64,000 nt of DNA from assembly GCA_964035545.1 (NCBI GenBank), contig OZ037773.1, forward strand, positions 7,655,751-7,719,750. Reading direction: 5' to 3'. Position 1 is the stretch's first letter; the number at the start of each line of letters is the position of its first letter. Under the pieces are notes generated by a model. That model saw only the letters and a program-made list of their open reading frames with translations. It did not search any database and was not told where the DNA came from. The stretch is from Bugula neritina. Its lineage: Eukaryota > Animalia > Bryozoa. The position numbers and the translations under genes were made by a program. Of the stretch, positions 38,583 to 53,762 are shown in pieces.

Positions 38583-39914
38583 CCCACGACAGTCTTATAA
38601 TAGAATATGCAAAACTCGTACAACCAGGATCGTCAGCTATTAATACCACTGAACTGAAACTATAATTATAGTTCAATGATTAATACCTACAGTGTGTAAC
38701 ATTCTAACTAATAATTATTTTTCTTACAGTTGTAACTCGTAAAGAAGTTTAAAAAACATGCTAATTTAGGTGCTGAGTGTGCTTTTCTAAAACCAGTTGT
38801 ATAACTCTTGTTATTAGCAATTTGTGCATCATGTTCTAATGCACTATTTCCAAATTCATTTGTTTTCAGCATGCGATTTTACAAACTTCAAAATTGAAAT
38901 AAAAAAGTCCAAATCTATAAATCTATCCCAGGCACAACTTAACTAAACCTGTTTTTGCATATCGTATATCTTTGATGCTCTTTAATTCACATAACATGAA
39001 TGATCAATCAGATGTCAACTCCTATTTGAAAAATTGCCCTATTAAATGATCGCACACACCCATGGTCCAAGTTGTTGCATATATTTACAAGTTTGTGATG
39101 AAATAAATGAATTCAACTGTTATTTGTCACGTGGACACAACTGAGTAGTGTCCAGTTTAATTGGAGCTCTTAGTCCTAGTCTTGTTTAGTGATTTCTTGG
39201 CTGATTAAAAGTAACAGCACAGCTACACAGCATAGTCAGATTAAGAGCAGCTTGTGAATACTAAAGTTGCCCCACTTGCATTTACATTTTTATTTGCCAC
39301 TGGTTTTTCCTAAAAAGCCTAGAGGTGGTTTGCAAGAGTCTATTCCGTCATGAGCAGTTTTCTTACTTCCCATAAAATAATTCATTCTTAAGTTTTTCAA
39401 TTTTGGTATTCCTGGAATCACGCAATGTTTCTATAACTTCTTTTCTCGCTGAACAAAATAATTGTTGAAATAAACCCTATATTATATAGTTGTCACCTAA
39501 TAATTACCCAATAGCTATACACCTTGTAAATCTAATTCTTTGTAAACAGCTTCAAAAGCGTATTAGAGCTAAAGTAAATGTTGGGCAATGATTATTTAGT
39601 CCTATGCAATCAACTGTAATATAGTTTAACCTTAGGTGTCTATTGTCAACACAGTAAAGCATTTTATATGGTTTTGATGCTCAATATATAGATTATAATG
39701 CAAATTATTGTATCAGGTTTCAATTAAATATTCCTAAAATGGTTACATTGATCTACAATTTCTTCCTGTTTCCTGTAATGTCCAGCTATTAAACATTCAG
39801 CCACACTTTATACATCCATTTATAGGTAAAACAGTATCTGTTTGCTGGTTACAGCAGGGGAGAGAGTGGAGCTTTAAGGTTGTAGTGCAAGAACCATTAG
39901 GCTAGGATTCAATT

Positions 39915-42900
39915 ATGCTGCTTCGATTTTTTTGTTTGGGAATATTTTTTATTTATTCCATAAAACAAATCAAGGCATTAGGTAGGTTTTTTTTACATAT
40001 ATAATTAATTTACCCTCTATACTTGTAATCTAAGGAAGATATAAAACTTTTACTCCCACCGGGGTTCAAACCCGAGACCTCTGGCTTGCATGCAGGCACA
40101 CTAGCCCTTACATCACAGGGACTACTTGGTAGTCTCAACACTACAGAGCATTTCGAAGATTCTGTATAATATTATTCCTCTATTCTCATAATAGTAGAAT
40201 CATCTGTAAGCCTATAGAGTATAATACATTTATTTTACTATGGATTATAGCGCCACCAGAATGCAACCAGTTGTATAATCGGCGTGAAGTGTTTCCAGAA
40301 ACTCTTTCTCCTCATTTGAACGTATTCTCTGCCAGAACAGAAGTGGAGTGTATCAACAGGTGTAATCAGCAAAGTGTGACATGCTATTCACTGCTCTACT
40401 ACCCTGAAGGTATAATTGCTCTGTATTATCTCTAATTGTAAAGATATAGCGATATAAAATTAGAAATATGAAATATTTTAATCTTTTCAAATTGCAATTG
40501 TTTATAGAAATTGTGTACAATTTAGTCATTGAATATAATTATCTTCATTAATTGTTTATTGTAATATAGCATGCATATAATATACGTTTCACATATTTTA
40601 ATGAACAGCAAACCCTAAATCAAATTGATCTCTATTAGTCTAGAAGTAACCTCCCAAAAAGTGCTCAAAAAATTGGCTTATTACACTTTACTAGGTGGCC
40701 ACTCAAAAAAAGTTGTTCCTGGATCAAAATTTTGTGCTGATTCTGAATCTACAAACTCTAAAATTCTATCTCTACCCAAACTCAAGTTATTGCAAAAACA
40801 AATCGACATCTTGAATGGGTGATAAAAAGAAATATGGCTTGTGCAAAATAGTATCCAGTTTTATTAAGCTATCTTGAAGAAAAAATATTTGCTGAAATAC
40901 CAAAAATAATTGCCTCTTACTTAAAATCCTATGCTGATACTGAATTTAAAGACTGCAAGAAGCTATCTCAAATTAAAACCAAGTTGTTTATATAAACATA
41001 TATGTTTGTTATGAACCGACATATTGCATGAGGCATAAGCATGCAGAATAATCATGTATGACCAAGCTATTTATACAAAAATGAAAACAAAGTCATGCTG
41101 ATGTGTGAAAAAGCTATATTTATAAAGTTATAGTACAAAATGAATGTTGAAATGAATAAATATTGAAATCTTTTGAGCTCAGCCCAAGTGAATCATTTGC
41201 TAGTCTGTCGGCAGCCGTTAAACGTCTGCAGAAATCAACAAGATTCTGTAAAATTATTTAGAGGAACAGAAGCATGAGAGATGATCAAAATCAAATTGGT
41301 TGCAGCAAAATATATAACACATGTCTAAAAATAGTGCTTTATTATGAAAAAGTATTCTCGCCATCATTGTCACTGCCGTCAGTCTCATCATAGCTTCTTC
41401 CCCAATATAGAGCTTCTTTTCAGACAATTCTTACATTGACAAACATCAGTGCATGCACTGCATTTGAGACTTCTGACATCCCCATCTTGATATGTTGCAG
41501 CTGGTCTTACAGGAGCAGTTTAAACTTTGCAATATACATGTTCAGGTGCAGAAGCTTGATTCATCTACTTTATATTTATGCTGCCATGATTCTCAACAAT
41601 CTTTTTATAATGTTCTGGGGGTGGTGCATCAATATGGGCTGTTGTCACCCTTCCCCAAATTGCTGCTTGATAATCTGCTCTTTTTACGTGCAAATTTATT
41701 TCATCTTTTGTTGGAGGCAAACTCTATTAAGTTATTTTAGACGGTGAACAAAATACAGTGTATTAGACATTATCTATATTTGAATTTCCTGCTCCATAAA
41801 GTTTATAGACAAATTGTTCTACTTCAGCAGCTGTAATGGCTTACAGCTTAAAATACTTCCCAAGGTGTTCAAAGGTTCCCATATATTATAGATATTTTCT
41901 TAAAAGAGAGTAGGCTGTGCGCTATCCTTTTCCATAAAAAGCACTATAGTCGAACCACAACCTGTTAAAGCATGAAATCTAGTAAGTGCTGCACGCAACA
42001 GCAGTCCGGATTTATTTGCTGCAATGTTGATATCCAAATACCTAATATGTTTATGGTTTCCTCCCAGCGAGACGCTGTTTTTATTTTGTTACCATATATA
42101 TTAACATTACCTATATAACTGATGAATTGATTGCTAAATAGCTCATATGCTAATAGCTATAGTAGCTAACATGAATTATCTAGAATAATATTTTATTATT
42201 TTTACGAACTTGTGTGGGACAAAAAGTAGTAATACATTATTAATTATAGACACTATCTTTAATAGATACTTATTAACAAAATATTTTTTCAAACAACAGG
42301 CAAGATGTATAAAATATACAAAATTAATAAATTAATGCAAATCAAAAGAATTTATTTATGTGCTAAATAACAAGCAATTGATCCAAGTTTATTTCAATTT
42401 ACATATTTATCAGTAATATTAAAATAAGTTGCACATGAAAATACATTTTAACAAAATAAATAACTATCGTCTAAGTAGGAAATTTAGCCTAGCCTCTATC
42501 TGGCATGACACCATGATTACCACACCCGTGAAAAAATATAATTGGTAAGAAGGTAATATTTTGCAAATAACGAGACTTAGGATGAAAACATCCATGTCTT
42601 GAGATTTGATTATTACACTCAGACTTATGATGTTCATAAGATATTTTGCATGTAACAAAGTTTGTGTATCTGCTTCCTCGTGATCTAATTGTTAGCATTT
42701 AAGTTGTGCTTTCTTAGGAATTCCACCATGTTTAAAAAATTGTAGCTGAACACAATTTTTTGGTATGCATCAACTATAATAACAATATTGTTCTCTAAAA
42801 TATTTTTACTCCATGTTTCACACAAAAATGCACCAGTCTCAAACTCAGCTTGTTTTATTTGCTGATAAGAAATTATTATTTTTGTGACAAATGGCACACA

Positions 42901-45900
42901 TGAAAAAGTACATGCCTATGATCTTTGAATGAGGCAGCCTAAGATCATTTTTCTAATGGGTGGCCTAAACATAACCATATATATTTTAAATTATAGGGAA
43001 GCTTTAGGGTATTTCTTTTGTAACTGTAACTGATATTAATTGACTCTAGAGTCATTATATCAAGATAGTATAAAAATATGCATTTTAACCAATAGCATTG
43101 TTTTAAAAACCAAATTGCTTATTTATATATAGTTCAGCCTAAATTTATTGGCAAAGCTCAATCATACACATTTAAAATATTATCTTCCGGAGTCCAGATC
43201 AGCCTGCTCATGCTTCTCATTACTTTTTTGTAAAAGTAGTTAATATGATAAAAATGGTGAAGACAATCATTATCAGACGCAGATTTCTTTATAACTCGCC
43301 TTTTTTATAGCCGATCAATAATAATGTTTGCCTTATAACTAATAAACCCATTCCTTCGCTTGTTTTCGTCCATATAATCCACTTTTTTCCAGATTTTTTC
43401 ACAAGAAACTCACTAGAATTAAACTCAAAAAAGTGAAAAACACATCTATGATTATCTGCAAAAGTTTTTGCTTGTATATATAATAAACTAGCTTCAATAG
43501 TTTCAAGATAATATTTAATGGATTTTGACAAAGTTGTGAGGAAACAACTCCTGTAACATTTTAAAGAGTTTTTGTGACTAACTGGGTGGACAGAAAAATT
43601 TAGAGTTTTATAACAGAAAAGTGAAAAGAGTATCTATAATTATCAGCAAAATTATTTTGCTTATATAAAATAAATTAGCTTGAATAATTCCAAAATATTT
43701 AGCTAATTCACAAAAATGTTAGGAGAAAACAACTCCTGATTAATTTTAAAATTTTGAAGCGCTCTTGTGGCTAACTGGGTGCACAGAACAGTCTAGAGTT
43801 TTCACAGGTTAATTAGGACCCTTCAAACTCTCTATTTCTAAAAAAAATGCGTGGCCACCCCTCGAAGTGTAATGAGTGAAAGATAATTGGAGGTTACTTC
43901 TAGACTATATATCTCATTGCATGCTTGAATGTGCTTGTTTTAAATTATATTTCAAATAGTTAAAAATTACTTGTTTCTAATTGAAAAGAGCACCATTCAA
44001 AAATAGAAATGTAGTAGGCCTATACAAAAGATATTTTAGAAGAATTTTTCTTTAAAAAAATATTTAATTATGGAAATTTTGTACGTTATCAGTAAAATAT
44101 TATGCACATTTTTAAATCTCGTTGAACAAAAAACAATTGATTGAATTGAACTTAATATTTCATTATTTGATTTGCTTATTTCAAATTATATGTTTCATAC
44201 AACATTAACACTTATATATACTCATAGAAAACAATTATATGATATCGCAAACAGTATATGTGATTAATTAGTCAGACTGCAGTTAAATAATATATATTTA
44301 ATTGAAATGTGCTACAATTCAGTAATTATTATCACAAACAAAATGTTTCAATACTTTTATGTTTAGAGAGGCTTTGCTATGAGTTGGAAAATTCCTTCAC
44401 TGAGGTTATTTCTTCGACCAATCAGGAAGCTGCTAGAGCCATTTTGTTGACTACAACTATTCACCATGTGGTTAATGCAGTAAGAGTCATATTAATGAAC
44501 CCTGTATTCTTACTTAAATACTTCATTATAGAATATAGAGCATTCTAAAAGTAATTATTTCTCACTTAAATATAATATTTCTGAACAATATATGTGTATA
44601 GTTGCATACACAGGTAAGCTGTTTACAATAGCCATTGTTAGTATATAATGCTGCAATGCTTCAAGTTATTCTAAAAATTACTTGTGCTCAAAGAATTAAA
44701 GATACAGAAGCTACGCTTATGCAGTAATACTACTAAGTCAACTGAATTTCAGTATAGTTACAAAGTAGGCTCTCTTTCTAACTTTTCAAAAACTAACTTA
44801 TGTCAAAACTAAATGTCATGTAATTCATACAAGTTTATTTAGTGTTCATATTCCCCCCCCCCCCCCATGCCTTGACTATATTGATATATAGGTAGGGTGC
44901 TGTAGACTTCAAAAATAACTGCTCCTGGTGACTTTTTAAATGTTTTTTAAAATCAAGGAAAAAATGAGTTAAATATTTTACCAGAGTAGAACTTGCCTGG
45001 ACAGATTCTGCCCGGTGGGAGAGATATGCGTCACTTGTCAGAAAAATGATGACTCGTACTGCTTTGGTAAGTGACTCATGCAGGAAGTAATGCTTGCAGT
45101 TAAGTGTGACATCATGATATTATTATGACATCGTAATTCAACTATCAACAATGTTTAGCTATAATATTGTAATCGTTATCGGAAGTGGAAGCCCCCAATA
45201 CCCCTACTGTATATTAGTTATAGTCTTGCTGTTGATCTATTCATCCAACCGTTTGATATGGGGGGGAAGTAACGTGACTGGTGCGTAATAACAAGATACA
45301 ATCCAATCAGCTGTAGGGAAGACACGTGGTCAACTCTCTTATAAGCAGTGCCTTCCACCCACTGCATAGACCGGCTAGGCTGATAGTAGACACTTAACCT
45401 ATTACTCTTGCTTTGTTCTATAACTGATGTAAACCTTTTATTTCTTGTATCTTGTTTCTAAATATATATCTCTTATTCTCACGGTTCTCAATTACACTCG
45501 GTTTGATTACATAACACATCAGGGATGCAGTAATTGTAACAAAAATTATAACAATATAAGTATTTGGTACGTAACACAGTTTTTTATAAAAGGAGAGAAA
45601 GGAAACTAGTTTGTTTGAATTGAAATGTTTGTTTTGGTAAGAAAACATCTATTTTAAAAAATTTGACTTTTAATGCTGTTCAATCTTATCAACCAATTAG
45701 CAAACCAAAAATAATCTAGCACAAAGATGCTTTTTTATCAATTAGGTACTAAAATTTTTCATTTTTAAAGTAAGAATAAAAATGTATTTTTTTTTAATGA
45801 TAGTTTTTTGTCTATTTTTTCATCAGAATAATTGGCATAGTTATTAAAAATCTTACAATAACTCTTTATCTGCTTCCTTACCTCAGTTTGATGAGAGACT

Positions 45901-48900
45901 GTGTTATATAATCATGCAGCAAATTTAGTATTCAGATGTATACAGCTAGCAAAACTTATAATTTCAAGTTTACACTTTAATTTGACTTTTCCATACACAT
46001 AAATGATGTTAAAATACTTTGAAAAACAGATTAAAGCGATTTTAATTTATATATACAAATATGAATATAACAGCTTCTGTTCATTATAGCTGGTCTCGAA
46101 GAAGACTGCCCATTGGATGAAATGTATGTTGGAGCAAGACACTATTGGATAGGAGATTTGGATTCGTTCACCCATGCAAGGGTGGATCCAATCATAGTAA
46201 GCTTTTAAAAAATAAATAGAGCTTGAATGGTGAACCTGCATAAAATTTAAAAATAAAATAAATTGAATAGAGTGCAGTTCCATTTCATTATGTAAAATTC
46301 TTAGTGTTATATTAAATCTCATATAATATTGTGAAGCTGCCTAATATACATTTTAAGCACACGCAGTTTATAGGCAATTGCAACAAGTATAGTGACATAT
46401 AATATAATTTAAAAATTTGAACAGCAATTATGAGATAATATATAAAAAAATTTCAGTCCTTCAAATATCCGAAGAAGGAAAGTGAAACCGGTTTGCGAGT
46501 GACAGCACACATGGTGCTTCGGGGACATTACCAACAGTCTAATGGCTGTAATAGATGGTATTTCACATTTAATGGCCAAGAATGTGCTAACCCTGGACCT
46601 ATAGAATATGTAGTTTACAGCTCTGCTAGCCAAAACTACTACAGACCTAGTGATAGTAAGTAGAAGTCAAGATGGGTATTCTCTGTACAATTGTAGAAGA
46701 GTAGAACATATATTTGATTGCTTGCATAACTGATAATCAGAATTTGTGATTGGGAATTTGGGTCAAAATTCTCAATCACATTCTCCGCAAACTAATGACA
46801 ATTAGTTCGCATAGATGGGCAGTTTTATTTCAAAAGTTGGTTTACGCTGCACGCTATATAACTCTTCTCTCAAGCAACAAAATCTTTCACTGCCTATGTT
46901 AAGAAACTGACTTAACTCTGCAATTTAACCATTAGATTTCACTAAGATTTTATACAAAGTACAGAAATTAAAATTCAACAAGACTAACTCTATATTATTT
47001 TTGGCCATACTAGGCTTATTTCATCAGCTAGTATAATATCTTATGCTCAGTTGATGGCGCATGCTATGGTATACTGTCTGGTGAAGTTCACCTTGACCTT
47101 GTTATTGGACAATGTCAAGGTTACGAGCCAGAAGCTTGTTCTACTGGCCACAGCTTCCCTATAAGTATCATTGTTAGAGAAATAAGAGCTACATCTGTTG
47201 GTAAGTTGATGCTAGTTTTCATGTTTTCTAGATTATTCTTTTTTGAGAAGAGCCTTGATCTGGTTTTTAAGAACACCTGGTTTTTTATGTAATCTAACAA
47301 GCTGTAGCCTTAGATCTTTACCCACTTTTCAACTGGAACCATTATTTTTGTCACCTTTGATCTAGCTAAGATGCAACCTGTTCACATCTACTGTGATGAC
47401 ATTTTATGTTTTTTTATCCATCTCTCTCAGTTCAATACCAGGCCAGTTATTATTATCAATATTAGTTTTAGCACTAGCTACGTGCATGTAAAAACTACAC
47501 ATCAAAGTGATTATTTTACCTTATAAATTTTACTATTCAAAGTCAAAAATTTTCTGTCACAGTTACACATATTTCAAGTTTGTAGTAAACAAATATTATA
47601 ATAGTTATAGTATGTTATATAAAGTATAAACCATCACGTTGTCACACATTGCATTATATTTAATGAAATTTCTGCAATGGACTTTTAACCTATATATGCT
47701 TCAAAATAAAATCCATTCAACTTTAAAAGACGCTGTTTATAGCTATCTTATTTTCTGATTGCCACTCCATATTATTCCACAGCCAAAAAAAATCAATATA
47801 CCCAGAACTCTATTTCATCAAACACATTTTTTATTCCAGTTATTATTACATAATGTTATCTTTTTAATAGAATTTCTGGAGGCAGGAGTTGATTGCCCAA
47901 GCAAATCCACTTTAAATTATAAGCAGTTTACATGGACTGATGAGACCTCGTTTAATCATACATTAGGCACAGATGAGGTGGTAGTCAGGGTGGGTATTAT
48001 ATAGTATTAATAAATATTATTTTGTATGAAGGTGTAAGTTTTATCTAACTCGGCACCAGGAAGTTTATGTTTGTTGAACTTCAACCCCACAGTTTAGAAA
48101 TCATTGCATTGAACTCTAATCCAGCAGTGTGGTTTGCCAATAAACGATGCAATTCAACAAACTCTGAAATACTAATTTTTTAATAGTTCTCCAATTTTCA
48201 TTCCATAGTTGAAGTTTAATTTTAATAGGCATGTTTTAATTTTGTTGGCTATAATTTAAACATATTGTTTTTGCTATCAACTGCTCTAATGGATATATTG
48301 TGAATATATGAATTAATACATGATTGTAAAGCAAATTAGTTGTAAATATAGAGCGAGATTTTCCGGAAGCTGGTGGCTGACTCTTCACTCCGTATCCGGT
48401 ACCAGGCTGTGTTCGGCATTGAGATGCAGGCAGGAGAGACTCAGTGTGGACAAGTGTAAGATATTTTATTCTTCACGGAGTCGGCCATTGATACTCTTCA
48501 TGTAATCGGCCATTACTTTTCTTCATGCAGTCAACCATTAATACTTTTCATGTAGTATAGGCCATTGGTACAAATCTGTCTATTGATACTCTGTATAACT
48601 CCATAATATACACTGCTATGCCTGGCAGAGCAGCCCTGAAAAAGTCTGCAGAAAAGATAGTATATTTTAAACTTCAGTTGAGTAAGGTAGTAACAACTAG
48701 CCCTGTTTTATAAACTATTTAGTGTTTTATGTAGAGTGTAGATGTATTAGAGTAGACATAGAAAATAGTACTCACTGATCTGTAAAGTCGGAGAAGCAAG
48801 GAGTAAGTGTCGCCCACCGAGTATTGAAATTTACTTTTGACTTTAAGTTGAGTACCAAAGAATTTTCAATAGCCTAAGCTCTTTAATAGTCTTAATAAAT

Positions 48901-51900
48901 GTTGGTTTAGAGTGTGAGTTGATTTGATTGCAGAATGATTAAAGCAGATGATAATGCCTGCACTCAATCTGTGGGGTCACTCATTTTTGCAGAAGGAGCA
49001 AATGCATTCTCAGATTGGTCTAAGCATTTGGCATCCAGAACTGGTTTGTAGCTATACCACTATATACAATGTGTCAGTAAACATAGATACATACTATATA
49101 ATATACGGTGCATGATAGACATTATACATATATACTGTACATAATAATTATGCATAGTGTTATATACACTACTCATATATGCTATACATGTACATACTAT
49201 ATAACATAATATGCACTATATACATATATACTATACATGCATGCTATACAACTACGCTGTGCAATATATATAGCACTACACATATATATAATATGCATAT
49301 ATACTATGCATATATACTATAAATTATATACACTGTACTTTATGTAATATAACACTATACATAAATACTATACTCCCTATACCAGTATGTATTGTATAGT
49401 TGAAGGTGTGTGCTATGTAACTGGTCCAGCTGCTCCAATTGTGGTAACCATAGTCGCTACGGCTTGCGCCAGTGATAGCCTTCTACCTACTCTCTTTATT
49501 TTTGGCTTTAATGAGTACACGTCCCGTCTGCAAGTAGAGGAGGTGAGAATTGCAAGCTACAAGGATGTTGGTGAGTGTAGAATCTCTTTGAGGATTCTCT
49601 GTCGTTGGATAAAAGTTCTGATATAGCATGACTGGTTACCTGCTGCTACTTTAAGCCCATTTTGCACTCTTCCGGAGGGTTAATAAATTTTTCGATTGTT
49701 TGGGTTAGTTAGCAATGCATGCAGAGAGGAAATATAAAGCCCCAAGAAAAAGGATATATTATATAATTCCAGTTGTTTCCAAACTACAAATGAGTGCTAT
49801 TGCTTCATATTCAGCTTGAACACTTCTAGTTTTATTTGAAACAAAAGTGAAAGCTGTTGCAGCTTTTTATAATTATCTATATACATAACTATTCCGTGAA
49901 AAGGGCTATACTATTCAGTTAGCTGACCTCAATGTTCTTCCTTATAGATTAGTTAAATTATTCTGTAAAAAATCAGTCTAAAATGAGTTAGGGAAGATTT
50001 CAGCATCTTGTTAAAGATAGCGAAGCACACAATGGGTGCTTCAAACTTTCTCAATTTTATCTTTTTCAACCTGCCTAAACACTATACAGTATCTTTTCAA
50101 GTTCTTAGGTTAACACCCCCCCCCCTCAGCCCTCCTAACCAACTTTTATAGACTCAGCTACAACTATCTGCCAAGAAGGATTGGAGGAGGTGTGCATTCC
50201 ATGTCTCTTTCAAAAATTTGGGGGGTGAAAAATTTCCCTCAAATATTTACCTTATATTTTAGCATGTTGGTTATATATTTAGTGATGGACTCCCAGGGAC
50301 AGCCTTTCCAGGCCCATCAGGCAGATTTGAGAAAGTGCCACAGGACCAGTCTAAATTCACATGCAGTTGTCCCACAAGCAATATTCACTTTCACATTCAT
50401 TAAGAAGTTCCTAGACACAGCTATTCGGGTCACATCTTCTTCTACCCATGCAGCTTATCATGATTCACCACTCTTTAACCGAGTCTGTACCCAGTGGTGA
50501 GTGTAGTTGTTGTGTAAGCAGACACTGGCATGTTAGATTCATAAGTATTGGTCAAAATTTAAACTACGCTATGTCTTGCTTAACAGGTCTTTCAAGTTTA
50601 ATGGTGAAGATTGTGCAAGCCCTGGAAGAATCGCTGGATTAATTCACTTAGAGTCTCTATCTGAGTTTCATCAGCCATCACAAAGTAAGTACATGTATCT
50701 ATTGAATTAACCTACAGTAAAAGAGTAAGTCACTTTTAGTTGCATTAAACCACATTGACAAAGTACAGCCTAGTATTTATATTATCAAGTGACACTAGCT
50801 ATGTCTCCATGCTTCGAATTATAATTTATTTGATGCATGGAAACAGGAAACCGTAGTCATAGCAACGTAGGACTTCATTTAATGCATGAAGATTCACACT
50901 GCGGTTCCATCACTTCACGAGAATTGCTTATAAAGAATGAGTTTGTAGTTACGGTTTCTATGAACTTATGTCTGTGGCTTCAATTGATGCAACTATTTCC
51001 AAACATCGATTGAACGATGTATTCGCATAATGCTTGGAAACGTAGTATAGTGTATGCGTTTTTCTTCTGCAGACGATTTTATGAATATAAATGAATGTTT
51101 TACAGTTAGTGGAGTTTGTCACGGTCTGATTGTATCAACTCACACTATAACTTACAGCGTAGAAGAATGCGGCACCAACTCTTACCCTCTAGGACACAGT
51201 TACACCAGCTTTCAATCTCCTTTCTGGATACTGGTTGAAGAGCTGCGATTTGATGCGAGAGTTGTGTGCTCTTCAAACAATACCGTTGCTAGGTAACAAT
51301 TCAGATTTACATTCAATATATTATATTATATTGTTGCTATTGGTAACAATTCAAGTATACACATGTTACATGTCATAGTATATACGCATGTTATATGTCA
51401 TAGTGTGTACTTTTACTTTGTTTGTATATTACTTGGTCAGTCTGATACATCTTTTTTCACTAATACTTTGAGTTGTCTTCCCTGTACATTACCACATGAG
51501 TAAGAAGCCTGATTAAGATCTCTGCTACATATGAAAGTTAAAAGTTCTGATACTTTTTCTTTAGATGTTGACAGCAGAAGTTCTCCTAAAAATACAGTTA
51601 GATTCTTGAAAGTATGAAGGGGGCTGCATATAAAGGATGTTGTGACAGAGGTAATCTCTATAAACTGTGCATTTTTTTCTTTCAAGTAAAATTTTTATGT
51701 TAAGTGCTCTGAAAACAACCACAGAATATCGTCTTACACACATTTTAAATAAAATTGCGTGTCTGTAAGTTAAAAACCATTCATAAAGTTGAATTTTGAT
51801 AGAGCCAAATGATGTAATCCCGATTTTATGTTTTTTTATTTTTTGTTGTTGGCTATACACGTATAGTAATAATAATACTTATAATAATAATGTATATTTT

Positions 51901-52204
51901 ATCATAATATATATTAGATTATACTTCCAGTAATATAATCTAATATAATATAATATAATATTATACTATATAGCATGTATTGAGTAATATTTTAATATAT
52001 ATAGCACATATTATATATGAATATGTATAATATAATATATGCTATAATCTATAGAAAAAAGCTCAGTAAATCACATTTACTTGCATATACATGTATACAT
52101 TTGTTTAAATATTGTAATACTGGTGTAATAACTATATAGTTTACTTAGTTCCCTTTAAACTATATATAAATATATACATCATGTGTAGGTGTGTGTCAAA
52201 CTAG
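39915..52204 (+). CDS. Secreted protein, ~627 aa: signal peptide + PAN/Apple + FOLN/EGF-like Cys module + three tandem CTHRC1 C-terminal domains; 15 exons: 39915-39981, 40251-40409, 44367-44479, 44985-45066, 46090-46196, 46457-46655, 47051-47200, 47871-47977, 48352-48455, 48934-49043, 49400-49570, 50283-50496, 50587-50684, 51106-51292, 52189-52204
   Basis: All junctions are GT-AG and phase-compatible (1884 nt including stop). Motifs: ECINRCNQQSVTCYSLLYYPEERLCYEL (PAN); TCLDRFCPVGEICV...YC (FOLN-like); GLRV...CNRWYFTFNGQECANPGPIE...DGACYGI...GQC...TG...IIVREI (CTHRC1_C), with the pattern repeated twice more. AATAAA at ~52246. The tiny last exon is the least certain; an unspliced stop lies at 51294-51296. 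Confidence 0.8.
40050..40130 (-). mobile_element. tRNA-like SINE head (second family); related degenerate sequence at ~61488-61562
   Basis: The reverse complement reads like a tRNA 5' half and T-arm (GTGATGTAAGGGCTAG...GGGTTTGAACCCCGGTGGGAG), but the stems do not pair as in a functional tRNA. Confidence 0.5.
40636..43907 (-). mobile_element. Degenerate Academ (AcademX-type) DNA transposon in intron 2 of the CTHRC1-domain gene
   Basis: 19-bp TIR TAGTCTAGAAGTAACCTCC, TAG...CTA termini, TAT on both flanks. Minus-strand remnants of an XPG/PIN-like nuclease (IIKSQDMDVFIL; FHALTGC...SAFYGKG; LPPT...LHVKRADYQAAIW) and a Cys-rich finger (CSCKTSC...C...CTDVCQC), with stops and frameshifts. Confidence 0.8.
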
Positions 52205-52994
52205 ACTCATATTAAAATATTTTTTTGTTGTGAAGTGTATTACATAATAAATGTTGTTTATTATAATATAATTAACTGCATCACAACAACAAAATTTTGT
52301 TTATGGCCTTAAATATTCACAGATTCTAAAAATAATTATTTATGCGTTCTAAGCTTTGCATGTCTACATTCTACAGCATATAATACTATTATAAGCATAT
52401 TGTACGTACATGCACAGTATATAATACATTATATAATACTATAAGCACATTACATGATCACAGTTTACAACAGACAAGGCCATTTATTAACTTTGCAAGT
52501 GACATTATTTACAAGCAGTCTTAGAGTTATCTTCTCATAATAGAAAAACCTGCTATGTATGGAATTAGGTGGTCGACAGTATGTAGGTCAAGCATTAGTT
52601 GACTTTTTTTATGCAATAATGTAATCAATCAGTAACAAGTTGGGATATAAACTGGATAATTTGTGTCAGACACTAAATTTGAGTTCTCGGTGTAGCAACA
52701 CAGTGTGGTGTCAGCATGATGCCAGACAGCAAAAGGGTCAGCACTCTGTATACTGCAGAATCGCTGCAGATAGCTCTGGGCACTGGGACAAGTTTTACAG
52801 AAAGTGACAACTCTAGTTACACATTTAATAGCCAATTATATGTGGAGTTTCACTGAAAACTCCATGATGCCCTATAACTGTTCCCTCAACACATTACGCC
52901 CATCTTTTAGAGTGAGTTGTATATAGGAACAGCTACATTATGATAAAGTTGTCAGTAGTTGTGTTATCTTAACATATTATCAACTTAATTTTAA

Positions 52995-53762
52995 AGGATT
53001 GCTCTATCTTAGTTTATTACAATCACATTATAATTATGAACTATAATCTAATGTGTATGCAAACAATTGCGACTTTGCAAAGGGATATATGCCTAGAAAA
53101 CAGCTTTTCAAAATTCCAATTTTGAGGGAGGTAAAATTTTCAGCCATGAAAAAGAATAGCCTAATACGTGACGTGTGAACGCCAGTAACTTTGCCGCACG
53201 TGCTAACTATAACGCTAGTATTCAAGGTTGCTGAGCGCAACATCAACCAATAACGTTCAAGCAGGTACAGTGCGCTATATAGGTCAGCTTTGGTGCGCCC
53301 GTAATATTGCACAATCTGACCTAGTTTAGATCGATCGCAGGCATTCATCCTAAAGAATGCATGTTTTTGCAATGCTTTTTTCTATGTTTACAAGCAAAAT
53401 ATGGCCTAATGTTATCACATACATGTTATTTAACATGTCAAAAAACTATAGATTGAGATAATTCACATTTGCACTTCTATAAATATACAAATTGCGAGCT
53501 GAAAGATCACATCTCACAGTCATATTTCTATAGTTATTCATTTGTATAGTCACGTGACCAGCAGGAATGCTGGCGCTGTTACGTCACATTTCCCAGCTCA
53601 TTTCAAAATCGGCGTTTTGGCTGTTACCAATCTACACCCTCAACTTTAACTAACTTTTTCTACCTTTGGTCAAATGCTTTTTGTCAATGCATGCTTAGAA
53701 AAACACAATATTATGTGTGTTTGACCTAAATGGCCATTTATTAGACAAGATAGAGCAATCCT
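52995..53762. mobile_element. 768-bp TTAA-targeting MITE (Kolobok-like termini)
   Basis: Perfect 16-bp TIR AGGATTGCTCTATCTT, with TTAA at 52991-52994 and 53763-53766. Confidence 0.85.

What the first reader, a model, noticed from the sequence alone, without database searches (positions are those of the whole stretch)
39915..52204. Collagen-less secreted protein with PAN + FOLN-like + three tandem CTHRC1 C-terminal domains
Seen: a 15-exon frame that is nearly invisible in the ORF track and encodes three successive CTHRC1_C-like domains. Domains 1 and 3 keep W-x-F-x-FNG-x-x-C-x-x-P; domain 2 is divergent but keeps NYKQ-x-x-W, SSLRI, VEGVC and SRLQVEE. There are no Gly-X-Y repeats. Known: canonical CTHRC1 is a short collagen helix plus ONE such domain and works as a trimer modulating Wnt/PCP and TGF-beta signalling. 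Inference: the three domains may fold as a single-chain pseudo-trimer that replaces collagen-driven trimerisation, with the PAN domain adding a protein- or glycan-binding function. I do not know of a described protein with this architecture.
Basis: partly seen in the sequence, partly recalled or inferred. Interest (0 to 1): 0.8.

Follow-up and report, generated by a model that had tools for sequence, protein, structure and literature searches.

The report
Single-chain triple CTHRC1-head secreted protein
This bryozoan-like animal gene encodes a secreted protein with three different CTHRC1-type globular domains on one chain and no collagen stalk. A model of a relative packs the three domains like a C1q trimer, so one chain may do what three collagen-tied chains do in ordinary CTHRC1.

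Summary
On the + strand I could chain 14 GT-AG exons (39915-51296) into an open 627-aa frame. It encodes a signal peptide, a PAN-like cysteine core, a small Cys-rich linker and three CTHRC1_C domains. No Gly-X-Y run occurs anywhere in the window. D1 is canonical, D3 is clear and D2 is very divergent, but allelic differences in D2 are mostly synonymous.

The model is colinear end to end with 603-637-aa proteins that Pfam reads as PAN_1 plus three CTHRC1_C. These are several "uncharacterized" Lingula anatina RefSeq proteins and one uninterrupted ORF on a 2.6-kb Logan contig. Three more colinear paralogues lie on the same chromosome, and Pfam finds 89 CTHRC1_C exon matches in the genome.

An AlphaFold model of the three-domain part of the relative P0001 has pTM 0.84. 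It superposes on engineered single-chain C1q, adiponectin, Cbln1 and BAFF/APRIL trimers at Z 21-25, and the next hit scores Z 7.5. The pseudo-trimer idea is therefore supported by prediction on a relative, not on this protein itself.

Not supported: the FOLN label, the 15th exon and the end at 52204, and uniqueness of the architecture. No RNA data exist for this locus. The scan already found this family five times elsewhere in this genome. I found no paper describing it.

The parts
39915..39981 (+). Exon 1: ATG plus hydrophobic signal-peptide-like N-terminus (MLLRFFCLGIFFIYS...). Ends in phase 1.
   Evidence: In-frame stop just upstream; donor TAG|gtaggt.
40251..40409 (+). Exon 2: first half of the PAN-like core (...EVECINRCNQQSVTCYSLLYYPE). 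Symmetric phase 1-1 exon.
   Evidence: Splice sites. Aligns to the PAN_1 region of relatives. No Pfam hit on the exon alone.
44367..44479 (+). Exon 3: second half of the PAN-like core (E-RLCYELENS...). Phase 1 to 0.
   Evidence: Found by an exon search constrained by phase. Acceptor tttatgtttag, donor GCA|gtaagagt. Completes the conserved C-x3-C-x6-C-x11-C pattern seen in relatives.
44985..45066 (+).
   Evidence: Splice sites. The same module is conserved in P0001, P0004, P0007 and P0008. No Pfam match.
46090..46196 (+). Exon 5: N-terminal strand region of D1 (..EEDCPLDEMYVGARHYW..).
   Evidence: Phase 1 acceptor fits exon 4; donor ATA|gtaagc.
46457..46655 (+). Exon 6: D1 core with the canonical C-N-R-W-Y-F-T-FNG-Q-E-C-A-N-P-G-P-I-E.
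   Evidence: Pfam CTHRC1_C E 4.9e-13, 50 bits, profile positions 24-82. 37 related exons in the genome.
47051..47200 (+). Exon 7: C-terminal third of D1 (..DGACYGILSGEV...IIVREI..).
   Evidence: Pfam CTHRC1_C E 2.1e-5, profile positions 95-137. Splice sites.
47871..47989 (+). Exon 8: N-terminal region of D2 (..DCPSKSTLNYKQFTWTDETSF..). The donor is uncertain (47977, 47980 or 47989, all phase 0).
   Evidence: The other haplotype has G>A at 47989, the last base before the donor I chose. Spacing in relatives would fit 47977.
48352..48455 (+). Exon 9: D2 (..SEIFRKLVADSSLRIRYQ...ETQCGQ). Ends in phase 2 at the codon that is W in D1 and D3.
   Evidence: A paralogue 60 kb upstream has a 36%-identical exon in the same position.
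48934..49043 (+). Exon 10: D2 equivalent of W-x-F-x-FNG-x-x-C, here V-M-I-K-A-D-D-N-A-C (motif lost).
   Evidence: Both allelic differences here are synonymous.
49400..49570 (+). Exon 11: C-terminal third of D2 (VEGVCYV...SRLQVEEV).
   Evidence: A D2-specific SRL(H/Q)(V/I)(E/Q)E(V/I) motif is shared by the D2 of three paralogues.
50283..50496 (+). Exon 12: fused N-terminal and core part of D3 (..FTFIKKFLDTAIRV...CTQ-W). The 5' boundary is the least certain of the model.
   Evidence: Among 317 alternative exon combinations none scored materially better (86.2 against 85.1 bits). The paralogue at C9:5.31 Mb has the same fused exon.
50587..50684 (+). Exon 13: D3 core (W)-S-F-K-FNG-E-D-C-A-S-P-G-R-I.
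   Evidence: Its first base completes the TGG (W) codon split by the intron. tblastn matches to relatives.
51106..51296 (+). Exon 14: C-terminal third of D3 (..SGVCHGLIV...FWILVEELRFD..) and the TAA stop at 51294-51296.
   Evidence: Pfam CTHRC1_C E 7.9e-5. 32 related last exons in the genome, all matching only query positions 1-55 to 1-59. Relatives end 5-12 residues after the same strand.

Best explanation
What is shown: the locus is an intact 14-exon gene for a 627-aa protein. The protein has a signal peptide, a PAN/apple-like disulfide core, a small Cys-rich linker, and three non-identical CTHRC1 C-terminal domains joined by short linkers. It has no collagen repeat. It belongs to an old family with the same layout in the brachiopod Lingula, with many copies in this Bugula-like bryozoan genome.

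What is inferred from a model of a relative: the three domains, each a C1q/TNF-type jelly roll, pack around a pseudo-threefold axis into one closed head. This is the arrangement of the engineered single-chain C1q, adiponectin and TNF-family trimers. Covalent linkage would then replace the collagen stalk that trimerises ordinary CTHRC1. Because the three positions evolve separately (D1 conservative, D3 intermediate, D2 fast), the head is asymmetric, like the A/B/C head of C1q.

What is inferred from analogy only: it most likely acts outside the cell as a binding or recognition protein for glycans, matrix or microbial surfaces. The PAN-like module would give a second binding site. The large, tandemly expanded family would form a diversified repertoire, as C1q-domain proteins do in bivalves.
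For: Gene model:
- All 26 splice sites are canonical, phases are consistent and there is no internal stop.
- Three domains are found with a profile built from relatives and with Pfam on single exons.
- The model aligns end to end and colinearly with P0004 (aa 45-611 against 58-599 of 603) and with P0001 (2-615 against 7-607 of 611).

Architecture in relatives:
- P0001, P0004, P0154, P0152 and P0003 each carry PAN_1 plus three CTHRC1_C. Several are Lingula RefSeq proteins.
- P0001 is an uninterrupted 1836-nt ORF on a 2632-nt contig, so one continuous reading frame carries the whole architecture.

This genome:
- Paralogues at C9:5.305-5.313 Mb (+), 5.319-5.332 Mb (-) and 7.590-7.597 Mb (+) are colinear with the window gene.
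- For all eight last exons that passed the score cut, each paralogue's exon at position 1, 2 or 3 best matches the window's exon of the same position.

D2 is under constraint: of 9 D2 codons that differ in another haplotype, 6 are synonymous against an expected 0.23-0.29. All 8 listed indels lie in introns.

Fold:
- The model of P0001:150-611 has pTM 0.84 and mean pLDDT 77.
- The top Foldseek hits are the single-chain trimers 5HZF, 5HKJ, 5KCA, 4DOU and 4ZCH.
- VIA-align gives Z 25.1 / 24.7 / 24.6 / 23.6 / 20.9, rmsd 3.4-3.8 A over 340-353 residues spanning all three domains. The next hit is Z 7.5.

No collagen.
Against: - No RNA run holds this locus, so exon joins, the 3' end and expression are unverified.
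- The fold test was run on a relative that shares only about 24% identity overall. I could not hand the spliced window protein to the structure tools.
- The window's D2 scores only 26 bits and sits on a very long branch (3.86 substitutions per site). It has lost the W-x-F-x-FNG motif, and the N-terminal strand of D3 is unrecognisable.
- AlphaFold may pack any three C1q-like domains as a trimer from memory of solved trimers.
- The three domains cut apart and co-folded gave only weak support: score 0.38 against a best control of 0.18.
- No experimental datum on any family member exists, so the binding function is analogy only.
Confidence: 0.55

Rival explanations
1. The gene is real, but the three domains do not close into one intra-chain head. 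They would be independent beads, or each would pair with domains of other chains to give domain-swapped or higher-order assemblies.
For: Co-folding the three separated domains of P0001 gave only weak support (score 0.38, best control 0.18, runs of 0.19 to 0.46). The window's D2 is very divergent. Tandem C1q proteins such as mussel HcC1qDC6 have been handled domain by domain without any trimer claim (PMC5519582).
Against: A pTM of 0.84 for a 462-residue three-domain chain means a confident relative placement. Z is 21-25 over all three domains against five different single-chain trimers, and about 7 for everything else. The count of exactly three domains is kept in Lingula, in P0001 and in four genes here. 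Linkers are short, 13-22 residues between last and first strands in the model.
Confidence: 0.2
2. It works like vertebrate CTHRC1, as a secreted modulator of Wnt/PCP (Frizzled/Ror2) or TGF-beta/BMP signalling, rather than as a recognition or matrix-binding protein.
For: It shares the CTHRC1_C domain. Vertebrate CTHRC1 binds Frizzled and enhances Wnt/PCP signalling (PMC7058181).
Against: About 35 fast-diverging paralogues in tandem clusters fit a diversified binding repertoire better than a conserved signalling co-factor. The domains here are only 31-38% identical to their best single-domain relatives. No functional datum exists either way.
Confidence: 0.1
3. The chain is an artefact of joining. 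The PAN/Cys-rich exons and the three CTHRC1_C units would belong to two or more neighbouring genes.
For: No RNA evidence exists for this locus. A 3.96-kb intron separates exons 2 and 3. Tandem CTHRC1 genes are common (PMC7058181).
Against: Every exon junction keeps phase. There is no collagen exon anywhere in the window. My model needs no start codon or signal peptide ahead of D1, D2 or D3, though I did not search for alternative ones. The same order and total length occur in Lingula RefSeq proteins and in one uninterrupted ORF of P0001. Three paralogues repeat the order.
Confidence: 0.07
4. The locus is a decaying copy. D2, and perhaps the N-terminus of D3, would be relics, and the protein would be non-functional or function with fewer domains.
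For: D2 scores only 26.4 bits and has a long branch. It has lost W-x-F-x-FNG. The first strand of D3 is unrecognisable.
Against: The frame is open through all 14 exons. Allelic differences in D2 are mostly synonymous (6 of 9 codons, p about 0.01-0.03) and all indels are intronic. D2-specific motifs (NY.. .TW, SRL[HQ]VEEV) are shared with paralogues that are only 35-40% identical.
Confidence: 0.05

Closest known systems
Vertebrate/cnidarian CTHRC1 (collagen triple helix repeat containing 1; Leclere et al. 2020, PMC7058181)
   Same: Secreted. Same C-terminal globular domain (Pfam PF25815), which that paper models as C1q-like and able to form a trimer.
   Different: Canonical CTHRC1 has a short Gly-X-Y helix and one domain, and trimerises from three chains. 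Here there is no collagen, three different domains sit in one chain, and there is a PAN-like module and a Cys-rich linker. The paper defines Cthrc1 as CTHR plus C-terminal domain. In my term searches of it I found no mention of tandem C-terminal domains.
Lingula anatina 'uncharacterized protein' LOC106162620 (XP_013395411.1 / XP_013395410.1), LOC106165752 and LOC106180490, plus the Logan ORF P0001
   Same: Same architecture and length: signal peptide, PAN_1, Cys-rich linker, three CTHRC1_C (LOC106180490 as deposited shows two). They align colinearly with the window protein over its whole length.
   Different: Only 24-27% identical overall. Their D2 keeps the R-W-Y-F-K-FNG-x-E-C motif that the window's D2 has lost. 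None has been studied.
Engineered single-chain trimers of the C1q/TNF superfamily (scC1q head 5HKJ/5HZF, sc-adiponectin 4DOU, sc-Cbln1 5KCA, sc-APRIL-BAFF-BAFF 4ZCH)
   Same: The predicted three-domain head of the relative P0001 superposes on them at Z 21-25 over about 345 residues. That is three jelly rolls on one chain around a pseudo-threefold axis.
   Different: Those are laboratory fusions of chains that naturally assemble from separate polypeptides. Sequence identity is 7-9%. Here the fusion would be natural and ancient.
Natural tandem gC1q proteins: mussel HcC1qDC6 (three C1q domains, PMC5519582) and vertebrate CTRP4/C1QTNF4 (two C1q domains)
   Same: Collagen-less secreted proteins with tandem C1q-fold domains. 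HcC1qDC6 has a signal peptide plus three domains and is reported as immune-related.
   Different: They carry the bona fide C1q domain (PF00386), not CTHRC1_C, and have no PAN module. A single-chain trimer was not proposed in that paper (the word 'trimer' occurs 0 times).

Membership tests
CTHRC1 sensu stricto (Leclere et al. 2020: CTHR collagen repeat + Cthrc1 C-terminal domain) | Short collagen triple-helix (Gly-X-Y) repeat N-terminal to the globular domain | tested here: not met
   No run of 5 or more G-X-Y in any of six frames of the 64-kb window. No run of 4 or more on the + strand of 39000-53000. None of 3 or more in the 627-aa model.
CTHRC1 sensu stricto | One C-terminal CTHRC1_C domain (PF25815) | tested here: met
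   D1 exons hit PF25815 at 4.9e-13 (50 bits, above the cut-off of 27) and 2.1e-5. But there are three such domains, not one.
CTHRC1 sensu stricto | N-terminal secretion signal | tested here: inconclusive
   Hydrophobic N-terminus MLLRFFCLGIFFIYS read from the sequence. No signal-peptide predictor was available.
CTHRC1_C domain (Pfam PF25815), domain 2 | Profile match over the domain | tested here: inconclusive
   No Pfam hit on any single D2 exon. My own profile on the spliced protein gives 26.4 bits over profile positions 9-109 of 128. Position and motifs are shared with the D2 of paralogues. The spliced protein could not be given to the Pfam tool.
CTHRC1_C domain (Pfam PF25815), domain 3 | Profile match over the domain | tested here: met
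   The last exon hits PF25815 at E 7.9e-5 (23.4 bits, below the cut-off of 27 for one exon alone). My own profile on the spliced protein gives 80.6 bits over positions 15-124.
C1q/TNF-like trimeric jelly-roll head | Three jelly-roll domains packed around a threefold or pseudo-threefold axis | tested here: inconclusive
   Met for a model of the relative P0001: pTM 0.84, and Z 25.1 to the single-chain C1q head 5HZF with the next unrelated hit at Z 7.5. Not testable on the window protein itself. Co-folding of the separated domains gave weak support only.
PAN/apple domain (PF00024 PAN_1) | Profile match and conserved disulfide core | tested here: inconclusive
   No Pfam hit on the window's PAN exons. 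Relatives score 18-26 bits against a cut-off of 21.4. The window N-terminus scores 21.4 bits against a profile of the relatives' N-termini, with a best of 6.8 among 500 shuffles. The core C-x3-C-x6-C-x11-C is conserved.
FOLN / follistatin-N-terminal EGF-like module (PF09289) | Profile match | tested here: not met
   No Pfam family at E up to 10 for exon 4. No FOLN hit in any full-length relative. It is only a Cys-spacing resemblance.

The most novel reading that the evidence does not exclude
In lophophorates (bryozoans and brachiopods) an internal triplication of the CTHRC1 globular domain replaced collagen-driven trimerisation. This would give a natural single-chain, asymmetric C1q-like head whose three faces evolve independently. 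Fused to a PAN module, it then expanded to about 35 genes in this bryozoan as a diversified extracellular recognition repertoire. That would be a lineage-specific counterpart of the bivalve C1qDC expansion, built from a different branch of the superfamily.
Probability: 0.45. Interest if true: 0.65.

Novelty: new variant of a known kind. Interest (0 to 1): 0.55.

Why it matters
CTHRC1 is studied almost only as a vertebrate collagen-stalked homotrimer in Wnt/PCP signalling, fibrosis and cancer. A conserved natural family in which three different CTHRC1 heads are wired into one chain would matter in three ways.
- It would give direct evolutionary support to the proposal that the 'orphan' CTHRC1 domain works as a C1q-like trimer.
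- It would show that the trimer can become heteromeric and asymmetric by gene-internal duplication, something protein engineers did by hand for C1q, adiponectin and TNF ligands.
- It would point to an unexplored, strongly expanded secreted gene family in bryozoans and brachiopods, with possible roles in immunity, adhesion or skeleton and cuticle matrix.

This particular copy adds one case in which one of the three positions (D2) has diverged far from the canonical motif and yet still appears to be under purifying selection.

Tried and rejected
- RNA evidence: the look-up of sequencing runs found no RNA run, only one DNA run. Laying that run shows genomic contigs that follow the introns, so it says nothing on splicing.
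- The search for homologous proteins, once with P0001 and once with a six-sequence alignment, returned only P0001 and P0003. The word index misses this family, so those blanks mean nothing.
- Pfam on single exons of the PAN, linker, D2 and D3-core parts gave nothing, except a chance PHBC_N hit at E 0.02.
- The spliced 627-aa protein has no reference, so I could not submit it to Pfam, structure, atlas or complex tools. I used an in-sandbox profile and relatives instead.
- I searched 317 alternative exon combinations for a better D3 N-terminus. None was materially better (86.2 against 85.1 bits). One alternative, 50130-50189 plus 50379-50496, has a strong acceptor and cannot be excluded.
- The domain tree did not resolve positional orthology between phyla. 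Only the D1 of the window, of Bugula and of one Lingula-like protein group together (82/79). D2 is a long branch.
- Complex prediction on the three cut-out domains of P0001 gave a verdict of weak support. The score was 0.38 and the best of 3 controls was 0.18. That mark was reached by 51 of 78 solved complexes and 2 of 108 mismatched pairs. At 0.60 or under, however, it was reached by only 5 of those 78 solved complexes and by all 4 mismatches that passed. The runs agree in at least 6% of contacts and the partner's pLDDT is at least 76. I give it little weight.
- ARAGORN found no tRNA in the tRNA-like repeat of intron 1.
Full report
**What is in the sequence**

The window is AT-rich eukaryotic DNA, 29-39% G+C. 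It corresponds to G000:C9:7655751-7719750 of a 216-Mb assembly. Short open segments on the + strand between 39.9 and 51.3 kb carry CTHRC1-like peptides.

Reading the DNA around each segment, I could join 14 exons:
- 39915-39981, 40251-40409, 44367-44479, 44985-45066
- 46090-46196, 46457-46655, 47051-47200
- 47871-47989, 48352-48455, 48934-49043, 49400-49570
- 50283-50496, 50587-50684, 51106-51296

Every intron starts with GT and ends with AG and every junction keeps phase. The sum is 1884 nt, giving 627 codons plus TAA. I found exon 3 with a search for phase-compatible exons in the 4.5 kb between exons 2 and 4. It supplies the missing second half of the PAN-like core.

**Domains**

Pfam on single exons gives CTHRC1_C (PF25815) for three of them:
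- D1 core exon: E 4.9e-13, 50 bits.
- D1 last exon: E 2.1e-5.
- D3 last exon: E 7.9e-5.

The other exons give no Pfam hit on their own. The spliced protein has no reference and could not be sent to the Pfam tool. I therefore built a CTHRC1_C profile in the sandbox from the domains of database relatives and searched the spliced protein with it:
- D1, aa 163-283: 114.8 bits.
- D2, aa 313-442: 26.4 bits.
- D3, aa 479-607: 80.6 bits.

There is no Gly-X-Y run of five or more in any frame of the whole window, and none of four or more on the + strand of 39000-53000.

The intron pattern fits an internal triplication followed by differential intron loss:
- The phase-1 intron before the G-x-C strand is shared by all three units.
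- The phase-2 intron inside the W codon is shared by D2 and D3.
- The phase-0 intron before the S-x-x-Y/F-x-K-K strand is shared by D1 and D2.

I count 14 exons, not 15. The protein most likely ends at 51296. The 32 related last exons in the genome match the window's last exon only over positions 1-55 to 1-59 of 62. Relatives stop 5-12 residues after the same ...EE(V/L)... strand. Nothing homologous lies between 51296 and 52204.

Two boundaries are uncertain without RNA:
- The donor of exon 8 could be 47977, 47980 or 47989. The other haplotype carries G>A at 47989.
- The 5' edge of exon 12. None of 317 alternatives scored materially better. A paralogue has the same fused exon.

**Relatives**

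I searched 1.84 billion representative proteins with the 66-aa D1 core exon, because the claim rested on the absence of relatives. The search returned 168 proteins, and many have several matched stretches.

Pfam reads the following as PAN_1 plus three CTHRC1_C, with no collagen:
- P0001, 611 aa.
- P0004 (603 aa) and P0154 (637 aa).
- P0152 (597 aa) and P0003 (506 aa).
- P0007 (449 aa) shows PAN_1 plus two CTHRC1_C.

All of these except P0001 and P0152 are Lingula anatina RefSeq or UniRef entries named 'uncharacterized protein'. P0152 is a MetaClust entry in the same 90% cluster as P0003. P0001 is an uninterrupted 1836-nt ORF on a 2632-nt Logan contig. It therefore shows one continuous reading frame carrying the whole architecture. 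I could not check whether that run is RNA.

The window protein aligns colinearly with both P0004 (aa 45-611 against 58-599) and P0001 (2-615 against 7-607) at 24-25% identity, and the domain envelopes almost coincide. Its N-terminal 162 residues score 21.4 bits against a profile of the relatives' pre-D1 regions. The best of 500 shuffles scores 6.8 bits. The PAN-like core cysteines and the Cys-rich linker line up.

Other tandem arrangements also exist:
- Bugula neritina KAF6026444.1 'CTHRC1' has two domains as annotated.
- Oscarella pearsei has collagen plus four CTHRC1_C plus fn2.
- Sea-anemone proteins have collagen and two domains.

**This genome**

The Bugula neritina protein matches C9:10205525-10211135 at 81-85% amino-acid identity over four exons. 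The animal is therefore a fairly close relative of B. neritina, but not that species' assembly.

Pfam CTHRC1_C finds 89 exon-level matches on C9, C5, C3 and C6. The window's D1 core exon finds 37 and its last exon finds 32. That suggests roughly 30-37 genes.

I fetched three further loci: C9:5.305-5.313 Mb (+), C9:5.319-5.332 Mb (-) and C9:7.590-7.597 Mb (+). The last lies about 60 kb upstream of the window. Two of them show the full order PAN-like, D1, D2, D3 when searched with the window protein. The third shows D1, D2, D3 with no PAN match.

I then searched these loci with the window's three last exons. Each paralogue's exon at position 1, 2 or 3 matched best to the window exon of the same position, in 8 of the 8 exons above the score cut. 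D2 shares a position-specific SRL(H/Q)(V/I)(E/Q)E(V/I) ending. The triple layout therefore predates the divergence of these 35-40%-identical paralogues.

A domain tree gave the following:
- The D1 domains of the Lingula paralogues group together (98/91).
- The window's D1 groups with Bugula D1 (97/90).
- The deeper nodes are unresolved.
- The window's D2 sits on a branch of 3.86 substitutions per site.

**Is D2 alive?**

The only public run holding the stretch is DNA. Its contigs follow the introns and differ from the assembly like a second haplotype. Of the 40 listed differences, 10 fall in exons, all in D2. They change 9 codons, and 6 of those changes are synonymous. The expected synonymous fraction is 0.23-0.29, giving a binomial p of about 0.01-0.03. 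All 8 listed indels are intronic. Twenty-three further differences were not listed. This is modest but independent evidence that D2 is read in my frame and is under purifying selection.

**Fold**

I modelled the three-domain part of P0001 (residues 150-611) with a seven-sequence alignment. The result has mean pLDDT 77.4 and pTM 0.84, and the fold is all beta.

The five best Foldseek PDB hits are exactly the known single-chain trimers:
- C1q head: 5HZF and 5HKJ.
- Cbln1: 5KCA.
- Adiponectin: 4DOU.
- APRIL-BAFF-BAFF: 4ZCH.

VIA-align gives the following, spanning model residues 6-459:

| Target | Z | rmsd (A) | Aligned residues |
|---|---|---|---|
| 5HZF | 25.1 | 3.4 | 342 |
| 4DOU | 24.7 | 3.5 | 340 |
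| 5HKJ | 24.6 | 3.4 | 344 |
| 5KCA | 23.6 | 3.7 | 353 |
| 4ZCH | 20.9 | 3.8 | 347 |
| next entry | 7.5 | | |

The linkers between the last strand of one domain and the first strand of the next are about 13 and 22 residues long. They are short, as a closed single-chain head would need.

Co-folding the three domains as separate chains gave only weak support:
- Score 0.38, best control 0.18.
- That mark was reached by 51 of 78 solved complexes and 2 of 108 mismatches.
- At 0.60 or under it was reached by only 5 of those 78 solved complexes, and by all 4 mismatches that passed.
- The runs agree in at least 6% of contacts, and the partner's pLDDT is at least 76.

The pseudo-trimer is thus a well-supported prediction for the family. 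For this copy it is an inference.

**Literature**

The systematic study of the family (PMC7058181) defines Cthrc1 as collagen repeat plus C-terminal domain and models the domain as a C1q-like trimer. It notes collagen-less domains in choanoflagellates and clade-specific expansions in brachiopods and phoronids. My term searches of it found no mention of tandem C-terminal domains, PAN fusions or bryozoans. No paper in the library holds both 'CTHRC1' and 'PAN domain'. Natural tandem domains of the true C1q family are known: mussel HcC1qDC6 with three (immune-related) and CTRP4 with two.

**Earlier findings of this scan**

Five earlier reports on other DNA of this genome describe the same family and reach the same reading. 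I treated them as leads. My own searches reproduce the following:
- the Lingula relatives;
- the Bugula-like origin of the genome;
- the family size;
- the C1q-like packing of a relative's model.

I had found the pair at C9:5.3 Mb before reading the note that covers it.

**Verdict**

This is a real, intact member of an uncharacterised, conserved and locally expanded family. It is a collagen-less CTHRC1 variant whose three heads are predicted to form one asymmetric C1q-like unit. It is new to the literature, but not to the sequence databases and not to this scan.

Noticed in passing
window 40030-40140 (intron 1): A dispersed repeat of about 100 bp with a tRNA-like look (..GGTTCAAACCCGAGACC..). 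It has 40 further scored copies at 77-84% identity on many chromosomes, from 308 first-look candidates. ARAGORN calls no tRNA, so it is probably a SINE or MITE.
   Followed up: partly
G000:C9:7590500-7596500, about 60 kb upstream of the window (L011, L014): Another colinear D1-D2-D3 CTHRC1 gene on the + strand, 33-40% identical to the window gene exon by exon. I saw no PAN exon with this query.
   Followed up: partly
window 45401-51400 against run X1: The only public run holding the stretch is DNA and carries a second haplotype. It differs at 63 or more single bases and 8 indels over 6 kb. One contig skips 94 bp at 47210-47305 (intron 7), and there is a rearranged AT-rich tract around 49220-49331 (intron 10).
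   Followed up: partly
P0002, P0008, P0017/P0155 (database proteins, not in the window): Other multi-CTHRC1_C architectures exist. Oscarella pearsei has collagen plus four CTHRC1_C plus fn2. A 1400-aa MetaClust protein has PAN, CTHRC1_C x3, LamG, fn2 and pentraxin. Logan/JGI proteins of 1071-1395 aa have up to eight CTHRC1_C stretches.
   Followed up: no
ESM Atlas search with the model of P0001:150-611: A cluster of 431-aa phage (Uroviricota) hypothetical proteins matches the whole three-domain model (TM 0.65/0.69 over 385 residues). Single-chain triple jelly-roll heads may therefore also occur naturally in phages.
   Followed up: no
G000:C3:26057498-26133172: Three copies of a CTHRC1 gene lie exactly about 34.1 kb apart with identical match scores, which looks like a very recent triplicated segment.
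   Followed up: no
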